Source of the DNA: Antechinus flavipes
Taxonomy: Eukaryota
Length of the DNA: 64,000 bases
Direction of reading: 5' to 3'
Assembly: GCF_016432865.1 (NCBI RefSeq)
Contig: NC_067400.1
Coordinates: 629,052,001 to 629,116,000 of the forward strand
The notes under the pieces are model-generated. The model worked only from the letters and a program-made list of their open reading frames with translations. It did not search any database and was not told the origin of the DNA. Of this stretch, positions 9,880 through 63,411 are shown piece by piece. Numbering within the stretch: position 1 is the stretch's first letter; each line of letters begins with the position of its first letter. The position numbers were made by a program, and so were the translations under genes.

Positions 9880-12200
9880 CTTTCTCTCCAGTCATCCACG
9901 AGCATCAATTAAGCACCTACTGTGTGCCAAAACACCCGCATCCGCTCGAGGAGCCTGCCCCGTGCCGGGAGTCGCCAGCGGGGAAGGACACGAGCCCGCA
10001 GAAGTCCCCCCGTGGGCAAAGACAGCAAACTGCCCACGCCTCTGAGGGGTCCATTCCCAGTCACGAAGCATCCCCAGAGGGTCCCGGCAGCCTCGAGATG
10101 CTGGAGAAGGACCAGGATGGAGACAGAGGACAGACGTGCCAGACAGGTGGCAGCTCCCCACACTAGGATCCACCCAGGGGCTGACTGAGAAACTGCCTTA
10201 TTCCTAAAAGAAAAAAGGAGGAAGAAAAGGGAGAGAGGAGAGCTGAGTCTTAGAGGAGGTCTGTGCAAGGAGCATCCAGAAGGCCAGCGTGGCAAGAGAG
10301 TCGAGTGTAAGAACCAGAAAGGAGGGAGGGGCCAGGATGCGAAGGACCCCGGATTTTACAGTTGATCCTGGACATTAGTTCAGCCCTCCACATCTCTCAC
10401 ACGGATTATTGCAGTAGTCTTCCAATGGCACCGTCTGTCCCTGTGCCTCCCGTCTCATACTTCCTTGGCTCCACCTTGATTTCCAGACTCGAAAAGGAGT
10501 GGCAAGGATGTTCTCCCACCCTTTCACACCTTACAGGTCCCAGTAGGTCATCATCCAATCCCGTTCCTTTTCCTCCAGCACCTGATTCTTTATTGCCATC
10601 CCAAAGTTCCAAGCGGACTCTCCCCAGCCTTGCACTGGGCCCTCTGGAATTCTGGTTCCAAAAACATGCTTCATCCCAAACTTCTGTCCACTCCTTCCAT
10701 CCCCCTCATCCGCCGGGGAGGAGGGTCTTGCCCGCCTCCAGTCTCTCCCCATTCCATCCTCCATTCAGCCACCAAAGGGATTTCCTAAAGTGTTGTCACC
10801 TCCCTTGCTCAATAACCTCCTGTGTTTCAACCCTCCCCTTCAGGTTCAAATAATAAGCTCTCTCTGAACTTCAGGCTTCTTCCCCCTCTGCCTTTCTAGC
10901 TTCGAACCTTACTGCCCCACACTCCATCCGGGGACTCCAGCCTGGGCTGTCCCATGACCCTCCCCCTCCTGGCTGCAGGCATTCTCTCTGGCTGCCCCTC
11001 ATAGCTGGAATACTCTCCACCCCGCCTTCTTCCTTCTAGTCCCAAATAGAATCCCATCTTCTGGGGGGGAGGGGGAGGAGCTGGCCGGCCCAGGGCGATA
11101 GAAAGATAGAACCATTAGGTCTGAGCTGAAAGCAAGGGACAGCAACCTCCATAAAGTCAGTGAGTCTGTATGGCCCAAGAATGATGCTACAAACATGCAG
11201 ATGAGCCTTGGCAGAAAAAGGAACCCTGGAAAACACTCCACAAAGCCTTTACCAACCTAGTGGTTTGCTTGTCGTCTGCCCCTTTAGAGCTCCTTGAGGG
11301 TAGGGATTGGCTCCCAGGGCTTAGCACGGTGCCCGGAGCCTGGGAAATGATTAGGGCTTCTCAGTGGTTTCTCTGCCTCTCCTCTCCCCAATCCAATCCG
11401 CCCTCCCTCCCCAGGAAACTACCAGAGGAGTTTCCTTAAAGTAAGGTTTGGACCACATCACTTCCATACTCAGTAAACTCCAGTGGCTCCCTATTACCCC
11501 TGGGGGCGGGTAGAAATTCTCTTTGACATTAGGTCTTCTCAACCTGGCCCTTCCTCGCTGCTGACTCTTTTCACATAATTCTCTGCACAGTCTAAATGCT
11601 CGTGTGCTGCCTTCCCTCCTTCGTTGCGTCTGGCCCTCGGGCTCTGGCTGTCTTCAGTGTGTCTGTCCGTTCCCCTCTGTCTTTCTCGCCCCCATTTCCT
11701 TCCTAACTCAGCTCCGCTTCACTCCCTGCACCACAACCTCATCAACTGCTTTGAGCTGAGCACGTATCGTTTCCATTCCAGTCACAAACCCCAGACAACT
11801 CGATGCTGCCTTTGTTTCTGGATGGAGTGGCTCAGTCTATACCCGTGGTCCTCTCCTCATCCCATTCTTTTTCATCATCAGAGCAGCTTTTGTCTAGTGC
11901 TAAAAGATTTGGTCACAACACGTTTTGAGAAGAGTCTCTCACTTTATCCCACAGTCCTCCAGATGAGGTAAGTCAGAGGTGCAGTGTCCTGTCCAGGGTC
12001 ACGCAGCTAGTCTGTGGTCCCACGGGCATTCAGGTTTTCCCGGCCGCGGGAACCCTTTGCCACCTACAGCACCCCGGCTGCCTCGACCTCGTCTAAGTGT
12101 CCCCCCTCACTAGGATGTCAGCTCCTTGAGGGCAGGCTTTGCTTGGGGATCTGTATCACCGGTGGTTAGCACACTTCCTGGCACACGGTATCCAATCCCC
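9880..12200. mobile_element. Cluster of old L2/MIR fragments in the PPP1R12C-TNNT1 intergenic region
   Basis: L2 3'-end-like text (catcaattaagcacctactgtgtgcc; ttattgcagtagtcttccaatgg; agctccttgagggcagg) and a MIR core (agaggtgcagtgtcctgtccagggtcacgcagctagt). Boundaries are approximate. Confidence 0.6.
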
Positions 12201-13472
12201 TGACACGTTCGATGAGAAATACTGTCTGATTTCTCCCCGCTTTTACTCCCCTCCTGCCCCCAATTAGCGGGCATTCCTTGGGCATACATGCAGTACCTCC
12301 GGGGCCACCCTGTGAAGGTGAGCGGAGCTCCCGAGTCTTCAGGACCCTGGACAGCCGCCACCAAGTCCCTTTGGGTTCTAGCCCAAGGCGACCCCTGAGC
12401 AAGGAAGAGCAGCCCATTTGTGGGCTTTAAAAGGAGAAGGGACTTCCACGCATCTCTCCCCTCTCCCCAGCAGCTGCTCATGCATGAGGCACACATGAGC
12501 ATTGCCGCAGCCCTGGACCGTGGCTTCAGGCTCACAGCTGTCTGTTCTGCTGAGCTTTCTGTCCCCCGGAATAGGGGACTGACGGACTGAGAGGATCATC
12601 TTCAGCCTTAGGAGCCGACCTGGTGGGGAAGCTCTGCCCCACTCCTGGAGAGCAGACCGGCAGTGACAGCTGCCTTCTGTAGCCACAACCTTTTCTGAGA
12701 ACACTGATAACCTGGAGGGCCAGCCTGGGGGGGGGGGGGCAACTCGGAGGGCCAACCTGGGCTGAGGGGAAAACCCGGACCAGGGGGACAACTCGGAGGG
12801 CACCCGGACTGGGAGGACAATCCAGAGGGACAATCTGGACTGGGGGGACAACCTGGAGGGCCAACCCAGACTGGCTGGCCCAACTCCAGGGAGATAAAGG
12901 TTGCTCATTCATCTCCTGACCCTTTGTCAGAGTGAACTCCAGCCTTTTGTATCGAAGCTGTTCTTTTGTATGGAGGGGAAACAGCTGCCCTATCTCTAGT
13001 GCCCATCGCTTTCTTCGCTATTCCTTTTGGGGAAGAGCTTAAATGTGGACCAAAACTCAGCTCTTTAAGTGGCTTTCCCTGGCAGTCTGGGCGAGGGGCC
13101 GATGAGAGCCCAAAATAAGACAGCTTAGCCCAGTGCTTGGCACATGGACGCTTATGCTGTTGCTGACTTCTTAAAGACCTAGTGAGGGCAGCAGCCCTGA
13201 GGTGGGTGGGCCAGTGCTAATGCTACAGTTTTCATATTCTTACATACATGTCCCCCTCCCACCCCCCCCACCGGATGTACGCTCTCTGAGGGCAGCAACT
13301 CCAAAGCCGCTATGCATTCCACTGAAGGCAGCACTCGGTCAGGGCCCTCTTGTCACCAGGATCCCAGTCTTGGGGACAGGACTGGCCTGGTCCTAAGAAA
13401 GGAATCATGTGGGATCCTCCTTCCTTCCAGAAGAACCAAAGATCGACTTTTGGCAGACTACCCAGGAGTGTG

Positions 13473-19600: not shown

Positions 19601-22111
19601 TTCCTGGTGAGTCTCGTTTTCCTTCTATCTATAATGCAAAGACTCAGCAAACATTTCCTAAACTCCCTTCCTGTACCATTTTGGTCAAGACTTCCTGCGT
19701 GAGGGCAGCTAGGTGGTGCAGTGGATAGAGCACTGGTCTTAGAGGAATCAGAAGGTCCTGAGCTCCAATCTGACCTTAGACACACTTGGACTTTTCCTAG
19801 TTCTATAATCTACCANNNNNNNNNNNNNNNNNNNNNNNNNNNNNNNNNNNNNNNNNNNNNNNNNNNNNNNNNNNNNNNNNNNNNNNNNNNNNNNNNNNNN
19901 NNNNNNNNNNNNNNNNNNNNNNNNNNNNNNNNNNNNNNNNNNNNNNNNNNNNNNNNNNNNNNNNNNNNNNNNNNNNNNNNNNNNNNNNNNNNNNNNNNNN
20001 NNNNNNNNNNNNNNNNNNNNNNNNNNNNNNNNNNNNNNNNNNNNNNNNNNNNNNNNNNNNNNNNNNNNNNNNNNNNNNNNNNNNNNNNNNNNNNNNNNNN
20101 NNNNNNNNNNNNNNNNNNNNNNNNNNNNNNNNNNNNNNNNNNNNNNNNNNNNNNNNNNNNNNNNNNNNNNNNNNNNNNNNNNNNNNNNNNNNNNNNNNNN
20201 NNNNNNNNNNNNNNNNNNNNNNNNNNNNNNNNNNNNNNNNNNNNNNNNNNNNNNNNNNNNNNNNNNNNNNNNNNNNNNNNNNNNNNNNNNNNNNNNNNNN
20301 NNNNNNNNNNNNNNNNNNNNNNNNNNNNNNNNNNNNNNNNNNNNNNNNNNNNNNNNNNNNNNNNNNNNNNNNNNNNNNNNNNNNNNNNNNNNNNNNNNNN
20401 NNNNNNNNNNNNNNNNNNNNNNNNNNNNNNNNNNNNNNNNNNNNNNNNNNNNNNNNNNNNNNNNNNNNNNNNNNNNNNNNNNNNNNNNNNNNNNNNNNNN
20501 NNNNNNNNNNTGTGACCTTGAGCAAAGAGCATTTCTCTCTTTCTGAGCCCCCACCCCCATCTGTGAAATGGGAGAGGATTAGTCACGTTCCCTGTGGTTT
20601 GGGATTGCCCGCTGGGCGCAGTCCAGTTAGGACAGGCACTCACCTGGGTTTGGGGCGCTCCTCTTCTGTAAGGAGGGAGTTGAAGACAGAGAGAGATAAT
20701 TAGAGAGGGGAAAGTGGTTGGGAGACTAATACCTCGCTTGATCCTAGGCTCGGGAGGATTGGGAAGGTCTGGGTCTGGGCACCGATTCCTCTTGCCCTCG
20801 GGGAGGAGGGTACAATGGGTAGGGGGCGCAGAGCTGGGATCACACAGCGACCATATACATTCACAATTTGTTGGGGAGTGTTCCCCATCCCTCCAGGGAT
20901 CCCTGTTTCCCGGCTCCCGGTCCCTTCCCGCTCAGGGACCCAGATATCCCCCCTCAGCAAATCCTTCCTCAAGGACCCATTGGACCTGCCCCTGTAGCAC
21001 TCCTCTCCCACCCCCTGAGGGACCCAGGTCCCCCATTAGGGATCTCCCAGTTCCCACCGCTGCCACTCGCCAACTTCAGGCATCCAGGACCTCCCGACCC
21101 CCAGCTTTCTTAGGGACCCCAACCCCCTCCCTCCCAACCCCAAACCTTTGAATGTATATCAAGGAAAGAAGGCAGGTGTGGGAAAGGGAGGAGTGGGTGC
21201 GGCCCCTTGAAGGGGGCTCGATATTGCTTAGAGAACACCCAGGGGGCGAGTGAAGGGCCGCGGCCTGGATGGGATTTTCCCCCCTGCCCGGGTTCCCGGA
21301 GACGGAAGCGAAGCGACCACCATACCTCGCTCTGCAACCGGCTCGGACTCCTCAGGGGCTGGGGTGGGGGGAGAGGGAGAAGCGAGGAATTGGGGGAGGG
21401 GGAGGGTCCCGCCAGCAGCGCAGGGGGAGGGGAGAAAGAGGAGAGGCTGTTAAAGGGCAGAATCTGGCGCCAGGTGGAGAGTCCCCCCCATAATGCCACT
21501 GGCAGCCCCCTTGCCCTCTCTGGGCTATCACCCTCCCCCCCCAGCCCCAGGGGGACCCAAGGATCTCTAAGCGCCTTTCAGGCATTAGCGGTCACCCAGC
21601 CGTAAGAACCCGGAAGCCGCCGTCCCAGATTCAGAGATCCGAGCACCCCTCTGTCACCCTTCCGTAGAACTCACCTTCCTCCTCCTCCGCGGCCTCCTCC
21701 TCTGAGGTCAGGGAACCCACCGCATGGAGGGAGAAAAAAGAAAAAAAAAAAAAAAAAAAGGTTGTCTTTGGGAGGGGCGGTGGACAGCGCCGTGGTGCTG
21801 AAAGAGTTAAAGCCGCCGCCTCCTCTCCCTGCTCCCAAGTCCGCGGGCGCCTGGGCGGCCTTCGTGGCTCTTCTCGAGTTCAGGACAGAGCACGGCCCCG
21901 GGGGGCCGAACCCCAGAGCCCACCCCCTCAGGACCCAGGAGTCCTGGTCCTCCTTTCCCTCCCCATCCCAGGGCCCTGCACTCACCTTCCTGCTGTTCCC
22001 TATAGATTGGGACAGGAGAGAGGAAGAAGTCAGATCAGACATCAAGGTGCGCCCTCTCCCCACCCCCCCCAATACTTACTCCTCATAATCCTGCTCCTCG
22101 GTGTCTGACAT
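13614..22111 (-). CDS. TNNT1: Slow skeletal troponin T, 13 coding exons, 262 aa
   Basis: Exons: 22080-22111 (ATG), 21986-21999, 21675-21701, 21326-21358, 20644-20665, 19292-19355, 18830-18946, 18065-18142, 17488-17601, 17292-17401, 16182-16272, 16044-16084, 13614-13659; total 789 nt. Sequence [11 protein letters not shown]...[36 protein letters not shown]...KGRVGGRWK*. The non-coding first exon was not located. Confidence 0.96.
13672..13772. repeat. 23-bp minisatellite (~4 copies) just upstream of the last TNNT1 exon
   Basis: ggatgggagtcagaaccggggct repeated. Confidence 0.85.
16310..16720. repeat. GC-rich imperfect tandem repeat in TNNT1 intron 11
   Basis: Recurring ccctgccccggtcggtctctctccgctcccgcgctgacctcctcccctcgg blocks. 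Confidence 0.75.
16915..16930 (-). promoter_or_regulatory. CTCF consensus site in an intronic CpG island of TNNT1
   Basis: Minus strand GGCCAGCAGGGGGCGC, matching the CTCF core CCAGCAGGGGGCGC. Confidence 0.65.
19703..19785 (+). mobile_element. tRNA-derived CORE-SINE (MAR1/WSINE-like) fragment
   Basis: gggcagctaggtggtgcagtggatagagcactgg...ctgagctccaatctgacc (A/B box-like head typical of marsupial SINEs). Confidence 0.7.
19816..20510. other. Assembly gap (N run) inside TNNT1 intron 6
   Basis: Run of n. Confidence 1.
21782..21802. promoter_or_regulatory. Non-canonical REST/RE1 element: perfect right half-site abutting an inverted perfect left half-site
   Basis: GGACAGCGCC (21782-21791) followed directly by GTGGTGCTGAA (reverse complement of TTCAGCACCAC), in TNNT1 intron 3. 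Confidence 0.45.
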
Positions 22112-25525: not shown

Positions 25526-26270
25526 TCTCTGTCTCTCTTCTCTGTCTCTCCTCTCTCTCTCAGTCTCTCCTTCTCNNNNNNNNNNNNNNNNNNNNNNNNN
25601 NNNNNNNNNNNNNNNNNNNNNNNNNNNNNNNNNNNNNNNNNNNNNNNNNNNNNNNNNNNNNNNNNNNNNNNNNNNNNNNNNNNNNNNNNNNNNNNNNNNN
25701 NNNNNNNNNNNNNNNNNNNNNNNNNNNNTCTCTCAGTCTCTCCTCTNNNNNNNNNNNNNNNNNNNNNNNNNNNNNNNNNNNNNNNNNNNNNNNNNNNNNN
25801 NNNNNNNNNNNNNNNNNNNNNNNNNNNNNNNNNNNNNNNNNNNNNNNNNNNNNNNNNNNNNNNNNNNNNNNNNNNNNNNNNNNNNNNNNNNNNNNNNNNN
25901 NNNNNNNNNNNNNNNNNNNNNNNNNNNNNNNNNNNNNNNNNNNNNNNNNNNNNNNNNNNNNNNNNNNNNNNNNNNNNNNNNNNNNNNNNNNNNNNNNNNN
26001 NNNNNNNNNNNNNNNNNNNNNNNNNNNNNNNNNNNNNNNNNNNNNNNNNNNNNNNNNNNNNNNNNNNNNNNNNNNNNNNNNNNNNNNNNNNNNNNNNNNN
26101 NNNNNNNNNNNNNNNNNNNNNNNNNNNNNNNNNNNNNNNNNNNNNNNNNNNNNNNNNNNNNNNNNNNNNNNNNNNNNNNNNNNNNNNNNNNNNNNNNNNN
26201 NNNNNNNNNNNNNNNNNNNNNNNNNNNNNNNNNNNNNNNTCCTTCTCCCTATCTGCTCTTTTCTCTAGCT
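25360..26270. other. (CT)n-rich tract interrupted by N gaps (25576-26239)
   Basis: CT microsatellite flanks an N run that contains a short sequence island. Confidence 0.9.
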
Positions 26271-27871: not shown

Positions 27872-31893
<4,022 letters not shown>

Positions 31894-32060: not shown

Positions 32061-32555
32061 GTGTCTGGCAGACACCTCCCTCAGGTCCACAGGGAGCCAA
32101 GAATCCGGACACGCCAGCCCCTCCTCCCCAGGGACCCAGAGGCCCTCTCTCTGCGGTCTCAGAAAGTTCTCGGCCACCCTAAGGGGCCTCCCCTAGTCCC
32201 TCAACAATTCAGGCACCTTACCCCACCCCATCTGGGAGCCGAGTCTCTTCCTCCTCGGCACCTGCTTCCAAGTCCCAGCCCTCTGCCCCTTGGGGACCTC
32301 CCCGGCTTGATTCTCCAGAACCGAGGTCCCAGGAACCCCAGCCTATTCACATCTCTGAAACCCACCCGGCTGGCTCTCTGGCCCATTCTTCTCAAAGACC
32401 AGAGGACCCAGACCCTCCGCCCTCAGGAAGCAAGGCATCCCGAGCCCGAGCCATTGTTCTTGGGGACCCAGGAGTCCTGCCACCCCTGTCCCTTAAGGCG
32501 GTGGCGACACGCCGCACTCTCTCCCAGATCACAGACTGATGATGGGGTTCGATTC

Positions 32556-32561
32556 TTTATT
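32556..32561 (-). terminator. DNAAF3 polyadenylation signal AATAAA
   Basis: tttatt on +, about 155 nt after the stop and about 550 nt from the TNNI3 promoter. Confidence 0.8.
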
Positions 32562-32716
32562 CTAACAAGTTGCGACTCCCTGGGAAGGACAGGGGACGCC
32601 GAGCCCCAGAAATCCAGGGAGACGCGATCAGAATCTTGGGGCCAACATAGTCGTGGGTCGGGGAGGGGGCAGGGGCCTAGGAGAAACTAGAATATTCGGG
32701 GACCAAAGGGTCCCCT

Positions 32717-35700
32717 CTAGAATTCGGTGGCGAAGTCAGGATCACCTGCGCCTCGTGTTCTGGAGCCAGAGTCGTTGGGGGAAGGGTTCGGAAATGCCGA
32801 AGGTGGGGTCAGTCTTGGGGAAGAGGGGGCACCGGATTCCCCAGAGGGCATTCCAAGATCATCAGGACCCTTGGCAGGTCCCAGAATGCCCGGGAGGGCG
32901 GGGGCGGAGTGCCCAGGGGGCGGAGCCAAAATTCCAGAAGGCCCTAGCTCCGCATCTGTAGGCAGGTTCATTGTCTTTGAGGGAGGAGTCACATGGCTGA
33001 GGGGCGGGTCCCTCATGCCCCCAACTTCTGGGCTAGTGGCTGGTCTAAGAATGCCATAGGGGGCGGGCTCAGAGGCCCTAGGAGGCGGGGTCAGTGCTCC
33101 AGGAGCCTCAGCCTGGGAGGATGGGCTCTGAATTTCAGAGGGGGCGGGCTCAGAGGCTTTAGGAGGCGGGGTCAACGCTGCAGGAGCATCAGCCTTGGAG
33201 GATGGGCTTTCAATTTCAGAGGGGGAGGGCTCAAAGGCCCTAGGAGGCGGGGTCAGTGCTCCAGGAGCCTCAGCCTGGGAGGATAGTAGACTCTGAATTT
33301 CAGAGGGGGAGGGCTCAGAGGCCCTAGGAGGTGGGGTCAGTGCTCCAGGAGCCTCAGCCTGGGAGGATGGGCTCTCAATTTCAGAGGGGGCGGGCTCAGA
33401 GGCTTTAGGAGGCGGGGTCAACGCTGCAGGAGCATCAGCCTTGGAGGATGGGCTTTCAATTTCAGAGGGGGAGGGCTCAAAGGCCCTAGGAGGCGGGGTC
33501 AGTGCTCCAGGAGCCTCAGCCTGGGAGGATAGTAGACTCTGAATTTCAGAGGGGGAGGGCTCAGAGGCCCTAGGAGGCGGGGTCAGTGCTCCAGGAGCCT
33601 CAGCCTGGGAGGATAGTAGACTCTGAACTTCAGAGGGGGCGGGCTCAGAGGCCCTAGGAGGCGGGGTCAGTGCTCCAGGAGCCTCAGCCTGGGAGGATAG
33701 GCTCTGAATTTCAGAGGGGGCGGGCTCAGAGACCCTAGGAGGCGGGGTCAGTGCTCCAGGAGCCTCAGCCTGGGAAGATAGTAGACTCTGAATTTCAGAG
33801 AGGGCGGGCTCAGAGTCCCTAGGAGGCGGGGTCAGTGCTCCAGGAGCATCAGCCTGGGAGGATAGTAGACTCTGAATTTTAGAGGGGGCGGGCTCAGAGA
33901 CCCTAGGAGGCGGGGTCAACGCTGCAGGAGGATCAGCCTTGGAGGATGGGCTCTGAATTTCAGAGGGGGCGGGCTCAGAAGCCTTAGGAGGCGGGGTCAG
34001 TACTCCAGGAGCATCAGCCTGGGAGGATGGGCTCTCAAGTTCAGAGGGGGCGGGCTCAGAAGCCTTAGGAGGCGGGGTCAGTACTCCAGGAGCATCAGCC
34101 TGGGAGGATGGGCTCTCAATTTCAGAGGGGGCGGGCTCAGAAGCCTTAGGAGGCGGGGTCAGTACTCCAGGAGCATCAGCCTGGGAGGATGGGCTCTCAA
34201 TTTCAGAGGGGGCGGGCTCAGAGGCCCTAGGAGGCGGGGTCAGTGCTCCGGGAGCATCAGCCTGGGAGGATGGGCTCTCAATTTCAGAGGGGGCGGGCTC
34301 AGAAGCCTTAGGAGGCGGGGTCAGTACTCCAGGAGCCTCAGCCTGGGAGGATGGGCTCTCAATTTCAGAGGGGGCGGGCTCAGAGGCCCTAGGAGGCGGA
34401 GTCAGTGCTCCAGGAGCATCAGCCTGGGAGGATGGGCTCTCAATTTCAGAGGGGGCGGGCTCAGAAGCCTTAGGAGGCGGGGTCAGTACTCCAGGAGCCT
34501 CAGCCTGGGAGGATGGGCTCTCAATTTCAGAGGGGGCGGGCTCAGAGACCCTAGGAGGCGGAGTCAGTGCTCCAGGAGCATCAGCCTGGGAGGATGGGCT
34601 CTCAATTTCAGAGGGGGCGGGCTCAGAGGCCCTAGGAGGCGGGGTCAGTGCTCCAGGAGCATCAGCCTGGGAGGATAGGCTCTGAATTTCAGAGGGGGCG
34701 GGCTCTTGGGCATCAGGGGGCGGGGTTAAAATCTCTGTGTTAGTCTCCTCAAGGGGCGGGGCTTTGGCCTTCTGACAAACACTCGGGGCCTCCTCTTCTG
34801 GCTGGGGCTTCCGAGAGAAGCGCGCGAAGGTTTCGGGGGGACCCTCGTGGGACTCCGGTGCGAAGCCAGCAGCCTCAGCCAGCTCTCGGACCCGATCACG
34901 GAAACTCTCTAGCTGGTTAGGCCGCAGATCCACAAGGTACCTAAGGACGGAGGTTAAGTCAGGGCTCCCAGAGGCCCCGCAGCCTCAGCACCCAGGCCGG
35001 GCGGACAGCGCTCACCTGGCCAATTCCACAATCAAGCGTCCTCCGGGAGCCACGCAGGCCCCGAGCTCCGGGCTCAGCTGATGGACCATCCTGCAGAGAG
35101 GAAGCCAGGATTAGAGAGCTGGAGAATGGTGTTCCCAGATCCCTCGAGGGGGGATAGGCCATTTTTATTCGGGATCCCTGGGACAGGAAGGGCTGAACAC
35201 CTGCACTTGGGTCACTGGGGGAGAGGTCTGGGAAGTCGGGACTCCTGGAGTCCCGGGAAGGAAAGGACAGAGCTCTTAGGTCCCGCAGGAGGACGGGGAG
35301 GTGGGGAATCAGTGCTCCCGGAGTCTCTGGGAGGATCCGTTCTCCTGGAGGAGAGGGCCACGGAACAGTGCTCCCGGGTCATCGGCAGGAGAGGGCAGGG
35401 GATCAGAGTTCTTAGTCCCTGAGGGAGGAGGGACTGAAACAAGATGCCCCGCCCCTTTCCTGGAGAAGAGGGCTGGGAATCTGCTCCTGTCTCTTATGGA
35501 GGAGTTGGAAATGGGGATGACACCATCCCTGAGAGGAAGGGGTTGGTTTGCTTCCGAGTCCCTGAACAGAAAACCGGGGGCTCAAAATTCCCGAGTCTCT
35601 AAGGAGAGGCCTGGAGAGTCAGGACGCCTGGGTCCGAGGGAGAACTGGGGTGAGGGTTGAAGGATCAAGATTCTTTCTGGTAGAGGGAGGGGAAAGGGGC

Positions 35701-38700
35701 TCCCGGTTCAGGACGCCTGAGACCCTGAAGGAAAAGAGACAGTTTGAGCCGGGAGGAACTTGGGACGTAGGACTGCCGCCCGGACTCCTGAGGCAACCTC
35801 GGCCAGGGGCACTCCCTCAGTTACCCGCAGGACACGTAGAGAAGGTGGAAGCGGCTGCTGTAGCGCTTTCGGTGGTGCAGCGTCGGGGCGGTCCCCAGGG
35901 GCAGGAAGTGCACCCGGAAAGGTCTGGAGCCCGCCGGGTCTGAAGGCGAAGAGACCGGGAAAGAGAGAGGGGCACTCAGTGCCAGGGAGAGGAGGACGGC
36001 CCGGAGCGGACTTTCCTGCCCCGCCCGTTACGCACCAGCACAAGCTCCTCCCGGGCACTTCCCTAAATTCAGCCTCAGGGGAGGCACTTTCCCTTTCCCT
36101 GCCCCTTGCCCTCGGCAGGACTCCCATCCCCCTCCTACTGGCCTCAGTTTCCCCTCTAGGAATCCAGATGGTCTCAAAGAGCCCTAAGTGGGGGGGAGGG
36201 AGGGAAGACTCTTAGAGAAAGGAGACTAAAAGGAGGGGCTGGTACTCGGGAGGAGGAAAGTTTGGGGGCCTCTTGTCTGCGCTCACCGGACCCTGGAGCC
36301 CCGCCCTCTGCCTTGGTCTCAGGCTCGGCCCCAGACCCCTCCTCCTCGGCAGCCCCTAGGCTTCGAAACAGCGAGGTCACGTTGTGCAGGGAGATCTCAC
36401 CAGCGCACTGTGGGAGGGACGAGCAGGACATGTGGGCGGAGCCTGGATAAATGGGCGGAGCTGTGGAGTGGAGCAATTGTGGGGAGGGGAAGAAGAGGCC
36501 CAAAGGGGGCAGATTTGGGTTAAAGAGTGATATAGATGGAAATGGGACCCGAAGTCTTCCCGGAGGAAACGGAAGAGATACTTGGAGCGGAGAACCGGAG
36601 GCCCAGAGACAATCCCGAAGGCAAAGCGAAAGGGGGAAGCCAGAGACGCTGAGGGCGAGAGATGGAAACAGTGAGGGGGAGAGCCAAGGAGACAGAGAAC
36701 CGGGGCCACAGAGATGGAGAGTCAGGGAGGCCTTAGGTCCGACCAGGCCAAGGCCCGGGAAAGAGCAAGAGGAAGGGAGAAGGCCGGGAGGTGGAAGGGA
36801 GAAGGACGAGAGATGGGGCTCCCTGGGCACCTTAACAGGGGTTCCGTTGCGGCTCTTCAAGATGCTCTCATCGTCGGACTCGATGCCAAAGGCCACGAAC
36901 GGCCCCGTAGCCACGTCCCCCCAGTAGCCTCGCACAGCCACGCGCTCCCCTCGCTGAGGTTGGGGGAGACATGGATCAACTTGTGGACATCTGGGACCCC
37001 CAGGAGACTGACAAAGGGGCACTGGAGCCCTCAAATGTCAGAAGCTTGGAAGGGGGGCTGCTGGGACCCCGGAGACACAGGGCTGGGAACCTGAAGGCCC
37101 AGATCTCCTGAAATACAGGACTGGGGGAGTGGGCGGACCAGAATTCCCGAGAAGCCTGCCAAAGTGGGCAGAAACCAGAACTTTCGATTTCCTGAGGTGG
37201 TAGACTTAAGTTAGACTCCCACAGTCCCCTGAGGTGGTGGCTTCATTACTGGGTGATCAAGGGCTCGGAGGGATTAGGGGCGACTGGGACCCCTTGGGAG
37301 ATGTCTGCGTCCCCAGGAGCTGGGACAGGGAGCCTAGAGCACGCACGTGGCTCATCAGGCGTCCTGACGCTAGCGTCCGATTGGGGAGCTGATAGGCCGA
37401 AGCATCCCGAATCTCGAAGGCCACACTGGTTTCCCGCCAGCGACGAAACTCTCTGCTGTTGATGACCCGGGCCTGAGAGACAGAGGAGCTCAAGGACCCA
37501 GCAATCCTCCCAGCCCTTTGACCTTCCCACCTCTTCAGGCGATCAGTCTCCTAATCTCCACCCTTCAGCTGCCAGATGCCCCCGTGCAGAGGCACCTAAA
37601 ACTCCATTTCCCAGCATCATCCGGGAGAAGTGTAGGGGGGCCTTCCAACAACACTCCCTGCACCTACTGGAAACGGTAGTTTTCTCTCCCACCAGCCTCC
37701 CAGGGACCTCGGAAGTCCAGGCGCTCACCCCTCGGTCATGCAGCTTCATGTGCAAGTCCCAGTCGCTGACCCCGATTCGGGCGTCATAGCGGGAGCCCAG
37801 GTAACCCCGGAGTCGAGCGTCCCACAGGCGGCTCAGGGGGAAGGAGGCCTCGGCCTCGGAGGCCGCCCAGAAGGTGAACACGGCCTCCAAGGAATCCCGC
37901 TCCCGGTACTGAGAACCGAAAGAGAGGGGGACCATGGGAGACGCCTCTGCGACAGGGCAGGAGGCCGCCGGGACAAGAAGTGGAGCTCCAGCGGCAGCTC
38001 TTCCAGGACAGGGACTGATGCTGGTCTTCTCTGTTCATCCCCAAGCCTGCCCCTAAGAGGCACTTCACAACTGTTTTCTCTCCATCCATCGTCCATGCAG
38101 CCAGCCTCATCCATCCGTCCTCCATCCTCCATCCATCCATCCATCCCCCCCTCTATCAATCAGCCTTCCACTGCCTTTCTCAGAGAGCCGGAACAATCGT
38201 TCTCATTGCCCTTGGATCCCTGACGCCCAACTCAGCCCTAAAAGGCGTTTCACAAACTCTCCTTCTCCCCATTCACCAGATCCGGCCCTTGAGATAAGGA
38301 CAGATCCGAGATCTAGCGGGATCTGAGGAACAACAAGACGGGTCTAACCACAGTGGGGGAGAACGAAGAGGGGCGGGGCTGGGGGGAGGAATCATGAGCA
38401 CGAGAGCTGAAATGGTCAGTGGGGGCCAAGCGGTGAAGGCCTTTGAACGTCAGGAGGAGTTTCTAACGGATCTTGGAGGTTTATGATTTAATCATAAGCC
38501 CCTGGATTTTGTGCAGCCGAGGGTGGTCGGGTGGTCTCGGGACTGGCACTTTGGAAGCCCACCCCGGGGGGGGGGGGACGAGACTCGGGGACGCCCCGTA
38601 GAAGCCATCGGCCAGGTCAGAGTGAGGGGCGATCAGGCCGGAAGAAGGGCTCGTCAGCGGAGGGGAGTGGGGTGAGAATTAAGAGGAAGGGAAAGGAGAG

Positions 38701-45993: not shown

Positions 45994-63411
<17,418 letters not shown>

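What the first reader, a model, noticed from the sequence alone, without database searches (positions are those of the whole stretch)
32717..34940. DNAAF3 has a ~560-residue in-frame tandem-repeat tail that doubles the protein
Seen: the last exon is one open frame of 2224 nt holding about 21 copies of LTPPP[R/K]ASEPAPSEI[E/Q]SPSSQA[D/E]APG[A/V]. Unit length varies only by one codon (27 vs 28 aa), and there is a higher-order duplication (units 15-17 match 18-20). It has about 21 TP and about 17 SQ sites, is PEST-like and is predicted disordered. Knowledge: DNAAF3/PF22 is a cytoplasmic dynein pre-assembly factor (PCD gene), about 540-590 aa in human with a short low-complexity tail. Inference: frame preservation suggests the repeat is translated and tolerated or selected. 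It could act as a multisite phospho-array, degron or condensate-forming spacer for dynein assembly particles, possibly in sperm.
Basis: partly seen in the sequence, partly recalled or inferred. Interest (0 to 1): 0.75.

Follow-up and report, generated by a model that had tools for sequence, protein, structure and literature searches.

The report
Repeat-expanded DNAAF3 tail in Antechinus
The last exon of the yellow-footed antechinus DNAAF3 gene really holds 20 in-frame copies of an 81-base unit that roughly double the protein with a floppy, acidic, proline-rich tail, but this is the extreme case of a repeat-prone tail found in DNAAF3 across mammals, and nothing shows it is more than tolerated.

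Summary
Observation confirmed. On the minus strand, 32717-34940 is one open exon holding an 81/84-bp array: 20 full units plus one degenerate unit, open in only 1 of 6 frames. Upstream exons hit DUF4470/DUF4471 and TNNI3 lies downstream, so the gene is DNAAF3. The window is identical to the Antechinus flavipes reference assembly.

The RefSeq model from this same DNA has 844 aa. It skips 11 units through two weak GC-AG gaps. Contigs from an RNA-like run carry the skipped sequence at the same per-copy depth as the unique 3' end, which favours the full reading of about 1,142 aa.

The unit count rises across marsupials: opossum 0, wombat 2, possum 3, bilby 5, Tasmanian devil 16, antechinus 20. Eutherian DNAAF3 tails are also tandem arrays (14/15/28-aa periods on a proline heptad) but far shorter.

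Three estimates of non-synonymous to synonymous change come to about 0.65, and the absence of stop codons is uninformative. The best reading is a transcribed coding minisatellite that enlarges an intrinsically disordered tail under weak constraint. The phospho-array, degron and condensate roles remain untested.

The scan also noted a comparable coding minisatellite in sororin in this genome; I did not check that note.

The parts
32717..34940 (-). Last coding exon of DNAAF3 (coding part, 740 codons plus stop). The first base completes the Arg codon begun in the previous exon.
   Evidence: ORF and sequence; identical to the A. flavipes reference locus carrying RefSeq DNAAF3.
34730..34939 (-). 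Pre-array part of the exon (70 aa): the last predicted helix of the globular domain (residues 7-23 of the exon product), then a linker.
   Evidence: AlphaFold2 predicts a helix at 7-23 only; 4 aa differences from devil over 70 aa.
33095..34729 (-). Coding minisatellite: 20 full units of 81 or 84 bp (27 or 28 aa), 62.6% G+C, net charge -49.
33014..33094 (-). 21st, degenerate terminal unit, matched by a terminal unit in every marsupial examined.
32720..33013 (-). Post-array tail (98 aa), proline-rich and not repeated; includes a 31-aa extension past the end seen in non-dasyurid marsupials.
32717..32719 (-). Stop codon TAG.
32556..32561 (-). AATAAA poly(A) signal. RNA-like coverage ends here (contig from 32557) and is zero over 32300-32496.
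34941..35015 (-). Last intron (75 nt, GT...AG).
   Evidence: the junction ...ELAR|YLVDL... is the same in all marsupial orthologues.
35016..35090 (-). Penultimate coding exon (75 nt).
   Evidence: matches P0002.
34019..34585 (-). First stretch skipped by the RefSeq 844-aa model (567 nt, 7 units). The only intron-like ends available are GC...AG.
   Evidence: RNA-like 60-mer depth fits 2 copies rather than the 1 left by the gap.
33107..33433 (-). Second stretch skipped by the RefSeq model (327 nt, 4 units), GC...AG with a very poor donor.
   Evidence: a 64-mer that the gapped form cannot contain is present in RNA-like contigs at 1.71 times single-copy depth.

Best explanation
This is a genuine coding minisatellite in the last exon of Antechinus flavipes DNAAF3. 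An 81-bp unit (27 aa, with an 84-bp variant) was amplified to 20 copies, presumably by unequal exchange or replication slippage. Because the unit length is a multiple of three, copy-number changes never break the frame. The array is transcribed as part of the last exon and ends at the normal poly(A) signal.

If translated, it adds about 550 residues of acidic Pro/Ser/Ala/Glu-rich, intrinsically disordered chain to the methyltransferase-like core. That gives a protein of about 1,142 aa, against 541 aa in human.

It is the extreme of a general property. The C-terminal disordered region of DNAAF3 is built from a proline heptad and expands, contracts and homogenises lineage by lineage in therian mammals. 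The amino-acid sequence is only weakly constrained, so the most likely state is a tolerated, near-neutral lengthening of a flexible spacer or tail.

Shown: the array, its frame, gene identity, presence in RNA-like contigs, the comparative series and weak constraint. Inferred: the expansion mechanism, translation of the full length, and lack of a new function.
For: - Array and frame.
- Gene identity: Pfam DUF4470/DUF4471 on upstream exons; window identical over 13,430 nt to GCA_016432865.2, with TNNI3 downstream.
- Transcription: run X3 behaves as RNA. It has 88 Mb of contigs, depth about 1,400 over 32689-33076, at most 4 on introns and 0 beyond the poly(A) signal. Array contigs sit at per-copy depth equal to the unique 3' end, with ratios of 0.95, 1.71 and 2.10 for 1, 2 and 2 copies. 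This includes a 64-mer that cannot exist in the RefSeq-gapped form.
- Comparative series of full units: Monodelphis 0, Gracilinanus 1, Dromiciops 1, wombat 2, wallaby 2, possum 3, bilby 5, devil 16, antechinus 20.
- Concerted evolution: interior units are closer to same-species units than to the other dasyurid, while edge units are shared.
- Eutherian tails are also arrays. A 14/15/28-aa period appears in gopher, rat, voles, mole-rat, armadillo and big cats. Motif spacing peaks at multiples of 7. The gopher has a 42-bp, 11-copy array at the same place.
- Weak constraint: 0.64 and 0.66 for the flanks against devil; 13 synonymous and 20 non-synonymous unit variants, ratio 0.63, p=0.25; 4 non-synonymous and 2 synonymous changes against a sister species.
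- Disorder: composition on the disordered side of the charge-hydropathy plot; AlphaFold2 pLDDT below 50 for all but a handful of residues after about residue 40, and no secondary structure after residue 23.
- The human and Chlamydomonas C-terminal regions are described as inherently disordered and of unknown role (PMC10835030).
Against: - The RefSeq model built on this very DNA is 844 aa and omits 11 units. I could not see the evidence behind it.
- No exon-exon junction into the last exon was seen in reads. Contigs of the conserved upstream exons were absent from the RNA-like run, probably removed by the tool's human-likeness filter.
- Contigs cannot give the strand, and depth ratios come from only three contigs.
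- DNA run X1 has contig depths that do not match the window's copy numbers. An 8-copy 47-mer sits at 4 times single-copy depth and some 1-copy pieces at about 2.5 times. The array may therefore differ between haplotypes or individuals, or the assembly may not be exact.
- There are no protein data.
- Near-neutral substitution does not exclude selection on length, charge or motif number.
Confidence: 0.7

Rival explanations
1. The expansion is functional. It provides a multivalent, proline-directed phospho-array, a PEST degron or a condensate-tuning spacer that changes how DNAAF3 works in dynein assembly particles, perhaps favoured by sperm competition in dasyurids.
For: There are 23 TP, 20 SP and 17 SQ sites and 40 S/T-x-x-D/E sites. 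PESTfind-style scores exceed +5 for 18 of 26 segments. An [ST]PP-type motif is the one feature shared by marsupial and eutherian units that are otherwise unlike. Large arrays are kept in two dasyurid genera. Disordered regions of assembly factors are proposed to give multivalent transient contacts, and assembly occurs in liquid-like compartments (PMC12633730, PMC7785291).
Against: Non-synonymous to synonymous ratios of about 0.63-0.66 show no significant constraint. Unit number varies from 0 to 20 among marsupials with working cilia. Tail length varies more than tenfold among eutherians. No phosphorylation, stability or localisation data exist for this tail.
Confidence: 0.12
2. Much of the array is removed from the mature mRNA, so the RefSeq 844-aa form is the real main product and the protein is only about 1.5 times the usual size.
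For: The RefSeq model P0002 comes from this exact sequence and lacks 189 + 109 aa of whole units. Both gaps can be drawn with GC...AG ends, and the gaps keep the frame.
Against: No GT-AG placement exists. The GC donors are poor (CAG|GCTGAT and GAT|GCTCCT). An RNA-like run holds a 64-mer that the gapped form cannot contain at 1.71 times single-copy depth, and a 60-mer at 2.10 times where the gapped form predicts 1. No joints were reported. Reads of 100 nt cannot define gaps between near-identical units, so the gaps may come from alignment of other evidence or from shorter alleles.
Confidence: 0.1
3. The array length is an assembly artefact: over-expansion, or a mosaic of two haplotypes.
For: The assembly was built from noisy PacBio reads with canu/wtdbg2 and polished with 100-bp reads (PMC9290055). 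Contig depths in DNA run X1 do not match the window's copy numbers. The devil long-read assembly has a visibly error-ridden patch in its array.
Against: At 1.65 kb the array is far shorter than the reads, at about 100x coverage (PMC9290055). All units here are clean and in frame. RNA-like contig depths fit the window's duplicated blocks. The devil carries about 16 units both in its long-read assembly and in an independent, uninterrupted devil protein record of unrecorded source.
Confidence: 0.05
4. The unit is kept for a DNA-level role, such as an array of Sp1-like GC boxes or a recombination-prone motif 0.8-2.8 kb upstream of TNNI3, and the coding effect is a by-product.
For: Each unit carries GGGGCGGGC-type boxes on the plus strand (consensus). 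The same 11-mer GAGCCCGCCCC occurs in the gopher 42-bp unit but in another reading frame. TNNI3 starts near window 31893.
Against: Any Pro/Ala-rich coding sequence gives such boxes. A single shared 11-mer in G+C-rich DNA has roughly a 1% chance by my estimate, with no other support. There are no binding or expression data. The array lies inside a transcribed exon.
Confidence: 0.03

Closest known systems
DNAAF3 / PF22 C-terminal inherently disordered region (human 541 aa; PMC10835030, PMC12633730)
   Same: Same gene and position: a disordered tail after the Rossmann-like, methyltransferase-related core, encoded by the last exon, with unknown role.
   Different: The tail after the ETFARF motif is 699 aa here, against a eutherian median of 89.5 and a maximum of 220 (n=78). 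It is made of a 27-aa higher-order unit instead of 7/14-aa units.
Eutherian DNAAF3 tail arrays (pocket gopher 42-bp x 11, rat, voles, mole-rat, armadillo, big cats)
   Same: In-frame tandem arrays in the same exon, proline-rich with an [ST]PP core and acidic residues, homogenised within lineages, just upstream of TNNI3.
   Different: The unit is 14-15 aa and the arrays reach at most about 170 aa. The unit sequences cannot be aligned with the marsupial unit at protein level, and a tail search found marsupials only.
Coding minisatellites (VNTRs) in disordered protein regions, e.g. MUC1 20-aa repeats and the PER3 18-aa repeat (from my own knowledge, not tested here)
   Same: Units are a multiple of three bases, G+C-rich, change copy number by unequal exchange, evolve in concert and are tolerated in frame.
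   Different: Copy-number polymorphism within the species is only hinted at here. No phenotype is attached.
Titin PEVK 26-28-residue proline/glutamate-rich repeats (from my own knowledge, not tested here)
   Same: Works like: a 27-28-aa Pro- and Glu-rich unit repeated many times to form an unstructured, charged, extensible chain.
   Different: No sequence relation. There is no lysine-rich charge pattern, and no mechanical role is known or expected for a cytosolic assembly factor.
Sororin (CDCA5) exonised minisatellite in this same genome (scan note s1-196615, not checked by me)
   Same: An in-frame minisatellite rich in proline-directed sites that nearly doubles a conserved protein in Antechinus.
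   Different: A different gene and unit; an internal exon rather than the C-terminal tail.

Membership tests
DNAAF3 / PF22 orthologue | DUF4470 and DUF4471 domains encoded by the same gene. | tested here: met
   Exon-by-exon Pfam scan: DUF4471 E=3.7e-25 and 5.7e-16; DUF4470 E=8.6e-07, plus a weaker piece.
DNAAF3 / PF22 orthologue | Conserved position next to TNNI3, and identity with an annotated orthologue. | tested here: met
   The window is identical over 13,430 nt to the A. flavipes locus that carries RefSeq DNAAF3, with a troponin I gene downstream. Devil, bilby and gopher have the same layout.
Coding minisatellite (VNTR) | Head-to-tail units of about 10-100 bp with high identity. | tested here: met
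   Period 81, 20.2 copies, 91% matches.
Coding minisatellite (VNTR) | Unit length a multiple of three, and one frame open through the array and into conserved downstream codons. | tested here: met
   Units of 81/84 bp; 1 of 6 frames open. The post-array tail is in the same frame in antechinus and devil, with no indels over 113 codons.
Coding minisatellite (VNTR) | Copy number differs between related species, with concerted evolution of units. | tested here: met
   0 to 20 units across nine marsupials. Interior units are nearest to same-species units.
Coding minisatellite (VNTR) | Copy number varies between individuals of the species. | tested here: inconclusive
   Contig depths in DNA run X1 do not fit the window's copy numbers, but short-read contigs cannot size the array.
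Intrinsically disordered region | Low hydropathy with high net charge, enrichment in P/S/A/E, and no predicted secondary structure. | tested here: met
   P 24%, S 18.5%, A 16%, E 11%; net charge -49; disordered side of the charge-hydropathy boundary. AlphaFold2 gives only a helix at 7-23, with 683 of 740 residues below pLDDT 50; this was a single-sequence run, so low confidence alone is weak.
Multisite phosphorylation array | Repeated kinase consensus sites. | tested here: met
   23 TP, 20 SP, 17 SQ, 40 S/T-x-x-D/E.
Multisite phosphorylation array | Sites are phosphorylated and phosphorylation changes behaviour. | not testable with these tools
   No proteomic data were available.
PEST degradation signal | Segments free of K/R/H that contain P, D/E and S/T and score above +5. 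| tested here: met
   18 of 26 segments score above +5 with my implementation of the PESTfind formula. This is a sequence criterion only; turnover was not tested.

The most novel reading that the evidence does not exclude
The number of [ST]PP-bearing heptads in the DNAAF3 tail is a tunable valency that sets how the enzyme partitions into, or dwells in, dynein assembly condensates. On this reading, dasyurids with intense sperm competition were selected for about ten times the usual valency, making the array an adaptive, phospho-regulated scaffold rather than a passenger.
Probability: 0.07. Interest if true: 0.6.

Novelty: new member of a known kind. Interest (0 to 1): 0.3.

Why it matters
The role of the disordered C-terminal region of DNAAF3/PF22 is an open question (PMC10835030). 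Nature has varied its length from under 20 to about 700 residues in mammals with working cilia and sperm. This argues that exact length and sequence matter little. It also offers ready-made long and short versions for rescue and condensate tests.

In practical terms, the RefSeq antechinus model (844 aa) and the devil model (627 aa) both look wrong in this exon. Coding minisatellites like this one break gene models and long-read polishing.

Tried and rejected
- Pfam on the last-exon product found no family.
- I looked for splice junctions into the last exon in reads. No joints were reported, and the conserved exons were missing from the RNA-like run, probably filtered, so splicing could not be shown directly.
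- I tried to size the array from contig depth per bin and dropped it, because contigs that fit several places are summed. Only three single contigs were used.
- I tested whether the RefSeq gaps could be GT-AG introns. None can; only GC-AG with poor donors.
- I considered the devil frameshifts as evidence of decay. I rejected this because the indels are clustered in a patch of about 400 nt, the frame returns for the last units and tail, and an independent devil protein record (source not recorded) reads through.
- A search for the marsupial tail outside marsupials found nothing at E<=0.001. This is a word-based search, so it is not proof of absence.
- Bilby DNA could not be fetched.
- The review on disordered regions of assembly factors (King 2024) is not held, so I could not check whether the tail repeats are described there. 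Full-text searches for DNAAF3 with 'marsupial' or 'tandem repeat' gave nothing relevant.
All searches were exon by exon or used database proteins, and the 1,142-aa figure is arithmetic.
Full report
**What is there**

On the minus strand, 32717-34940 is a single open exon. An AG acceptor lies at 34942-34941 and the frame runs from 34939 to the TAG at 32719-32717. An AATAAA lies at 32561-32556.

Tandem Repeats Finder reports an 81-bp array at 33058-34705 with 20.2 copies at 91% identity. Cutting the protein at LTPPP gives 20 full units (34729-33095). Thirteen are 27 aa and seven are 28 aa; the extra codon is one CTA (Leu). A 21st degenerate unit follows at 33094-33014.

Higher-order blocks are recent. 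Units 15-17 and 18-20 differ at 2 of 246 nt, and units 3-4 and 5-6 at 2 of 162 nt. Only one of six frames is open across the array, and the array has no other copy in the window.

**Which gene and which genome**

Upstream minus-strand exons match Pfam DUF4471 (E=3.7e-25 and 5.7e-16) and DUF4470 (E=8.6e-07). A protein search with the exon product returned marsupial DNAAF3 proteins.

The locus that encodes the RefSeq Antechinus flavipes DNAAF3 (GCA_016432865.2, chromosome CM028219.1) is identical to the window over 13,430 nt, and a troponin I gene follows it. So the window is the published A. flavipes reference. That assembly was built from about 100x PacBio reads with canu/wtdbg2 and polished with 100-bp reads (PMC9290055).

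**The annotation conflict**

The RefSeq protein (P0002) has 844 aa, although it comes from this same DNA. It matches the exon product except for two in-frame omissions, of 189 aa (7 units, window 34019-34585) and 109 aa (4 units, window 33107-33433).

Within the range where each omission can be placed, no GT-AG pair exists. Only GC-AG pairs fit, with poor donors (CAG|GCTGAT and GAT|GCTCCT). Adding the 298 skipped residues gives 1,142 aa. I did not build the joined model; this is arithmetic.

**Reads**

Of the runs that hold the stretch, X1, X5 and X9 behave as genomic DNA. They have about 3.1-3.4 Gb of contigs, even depth and covered introns. X3 behaves as RNA. It has 88 Mb of contigs in all, depth about 1,400 over 32689-33076, at most 4 on two intronic pieces, 0 on the last introns and 0 beyond the poly(A) signal.

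Short-read contigs break inside the array, so its length cannot be read off. Three X3 contigs can still be compared with the unique 3' end:

| Contig (window) | Copies in window | Depth relative to unique 3' end |
|---|---|---|
| 33598-33658 | 1 | 0.95 |
| 33146-33209 | 2 | 1.71 |
| 34064-34123 | 2 | 2.10 |

A piecewise check shows that the 64-mer (33146-33209) cannot exist in the RefSeq-gapped form. The 60-mer (34064-34123) would be left with one copy there. So this sample's RNA carries the skipped units at full level.

There are limits to this evidence:
- Contigs give no strand.
- No exon-exon joint was seen.
Their absence means nothing.
- In DNA run X1 the contig depths do not fit the window. 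An 8-copy 47-mer sits at 4.0 times single-copy depth and several 1-copy pieces at 1.7-2.6 times. This hints that the array differs between haplotypes or animals but does not prove it.

**Relatives**

Full units before the shared degenerate terminal unit:

| Species | Full units |
|---|---|
| Monodelphis | 0 |
| Gracilinanus | 1 |
| Dromiciops | 1 |
| Wombat | 2 |
| Tammar wallaby | 2 |
| Brushtail possum | 3 |
| Bilby | 5 (nearly identical) |
| Tasmanian devil | 16 |
| Antechinus | 20 |

The devil count comes from P0001. This 1,048-aa protein has no source name, and its non-repeat residues are the devil's.

The devil RefSeq protein (627 aa) stops inside the array. In the devil long-read assembly the array has about the same length (L002:11321-12653). 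It carries a 2-nt deletion, then a patch at 12018-12450 riddled with single-base deletions. The frame then returns for the last units and the tail. That pattern fits unpolished long-read consensus, not gene decay.

Interior units are closer to units of the same species than to any unit of the other dasyurid. The first unit, the 'PPAA' type unit and the terminal unit are shared. So the dasyurid ancestor already had several unit types, and both lineages have since turned their arrays over.

**The wider pattern**

A search with the full antechinus protein listed 120 mammalian DNAAF3 proteins. Eutherian lengths are 468-643 aa. The exceptions are a 711-aa rat isoform and three read-through fusions with troponin I.

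Many eutherian tails are themselves tandem arrays:
- a 14-aa period in pocket gopher (perfect), rat, mole-rat, lemming and armadillo;
- a 28-aa period in a vole and a spiny mouse;
- a 15-aa period in big cats.

Even short tails (horse, orangutan) read as heptads of the type hydrophobic-x-x-P-P-x-E. Spacings between such motifs peak at 6-8, 14, 21, 28 and 35. The gopher locus has a 42-bp, 11-copy array at the end of the last exon, about 1.2 kb before TNNI3.

After the ETFARF motif the tail measures:

| Group | Tail length (aa) |
|---|---|
| Eutherians (n=78) | median 89.5, maximum 220 |
| Devil | 585 |
| Antechinus (window) | 699 |

A search with the opossum tail alone found only marsupials. 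This is a word-based search, so it sets a limit on sensitivity rather than proving absence.

**Constraint**

- Variable columns among units fall 9/7/13 by codon position.
- The 33 distinct unit variants split 13 synonymous to 20 non-synonymous. This gives a site-normalised ratio of 0.63, not different from neutral (p=0.25). The chance of no nonsense change among them is 0.52.
- Against devil, the ratio is 0.64 for the 70 codons before the array and 0.66 for the 113 codons after it, with no indels.
- Against a sister species (run X5), the post-array tail has 4 non-synonymous and 2 synonymous changes.

So the amino-acid sequence is weakly constrained. What persists is the open frame, the composition and the downstream tail.

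**Properties**

The array is 24% Pro, 18.5% Ser, 16% Ala and 11% Glu. It has net charge -49 and pI 4.05, and it lies on the disordered side of the charge-hydropathy boundary. AlphaFold2, run on the single sequence, predicts only a helix at residues 7-23 of the exon product and gives pLDDT below 50 for 683 of 740 residues.

By sequence criteria the array is PEST-like and rich in S/T-P, SQ and acidophilic sites. Whether any of these sites is used is unknown.

**Reading**

The best-supported account is a transcribed coding minisatellite. It has lengthened the intrinsically disordered tail of DNAAF3 to an extreme in dasyurid marsupials, and it is tolerated because that tail has little sequence or length constraint.

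Published work describes human and algal DNAAF3/PF22 as a methyltransferase-like core followed by a disordered C-terminal segment of unknown role (PMC10835030, PMC12633730). I found no paper describing the repeats. One relevant review is not held.

The scan has also noted an in-frame minisatellite that nearly doubles sororin in this same genome (s1-196615). I did not check that note; if it holds, such expansions are not rare here.

Noticed in passing
window 33107-33433 and 34019-34585: The RefSeq A. flavipes DNAAF3 model (844 aa) skips these two in-frame stretches of the array. Only weak GC-AG ends are possible, and RNA-like contigs contain the skipped sequence, so the model is probably too short.
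   Followed up: yes
L002:12018-12450 (Tasmanian devil, GCA_902635505.1): This patch of the devil DNAAF3 array is riddled with single-base deletions, while neighbouring units are clean and the frame returns afterwards. It looks like unpolished long-read consensus and truncates the devil RefSeq protein to 627 aa.
   Followed up: partly
L003:6761-7217 (pocket gopher), proteins P0069, P0115, P0112, P0048, P0014, P0036: Eutherian DNAAF3 tails are also in-frame tandem arrays (42-bp / 14-aa units, 15 aa in big cats) built on a proline heptad. The repeat-prone tail is therefore a therian-wide feature that I did not find described.
   Followed up: partly
window 33095-34729 and L003:6761-7217: The 11-mer GAGCCCGCCCC (reverse complement is an Sp1-like GC box) is in both the antechinus 81-bp unit and the gopher 42-bp unit, but is read in different frames. 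This could be chance in G+C-rich DNA or a trace of shared DNA ancestry.
   Followed up: no
window 32720-32812: Dasyurid DNAAF3 runs 31 aa beyond the '...SSPR[L/F]' end of possum, wombat, Dromiciops and Gracilinanus proteins, suggesting loss of the ancestral stop codon.
   Followed up: no
proteins P0026, P0043, P0113: Several eutherian annotations join DNAAF3 and cardiac troponin I into one 753-763-aa read-through product. Here the two genes are about 0.7 kb apart (DNAAF3 poly(A) signal at 32556, TNNI3 gene start near 31893).
   Followed up: no
window 34676-38113: DNA run X1 of the same species differs from the window at 19 positions over 3.4 kb of DNAAF3 but at none over 32300-33087. Its array contig depths also do not fit the window, so a second haplotype with a different array structure is likely.
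   Followed up: partly
window 19816-20510, 25576-25728, 25747-26239, 50216-50595: Runs of N (gaps or masked stretches). None is near the finding, and they were left alone.
   Followed up: no
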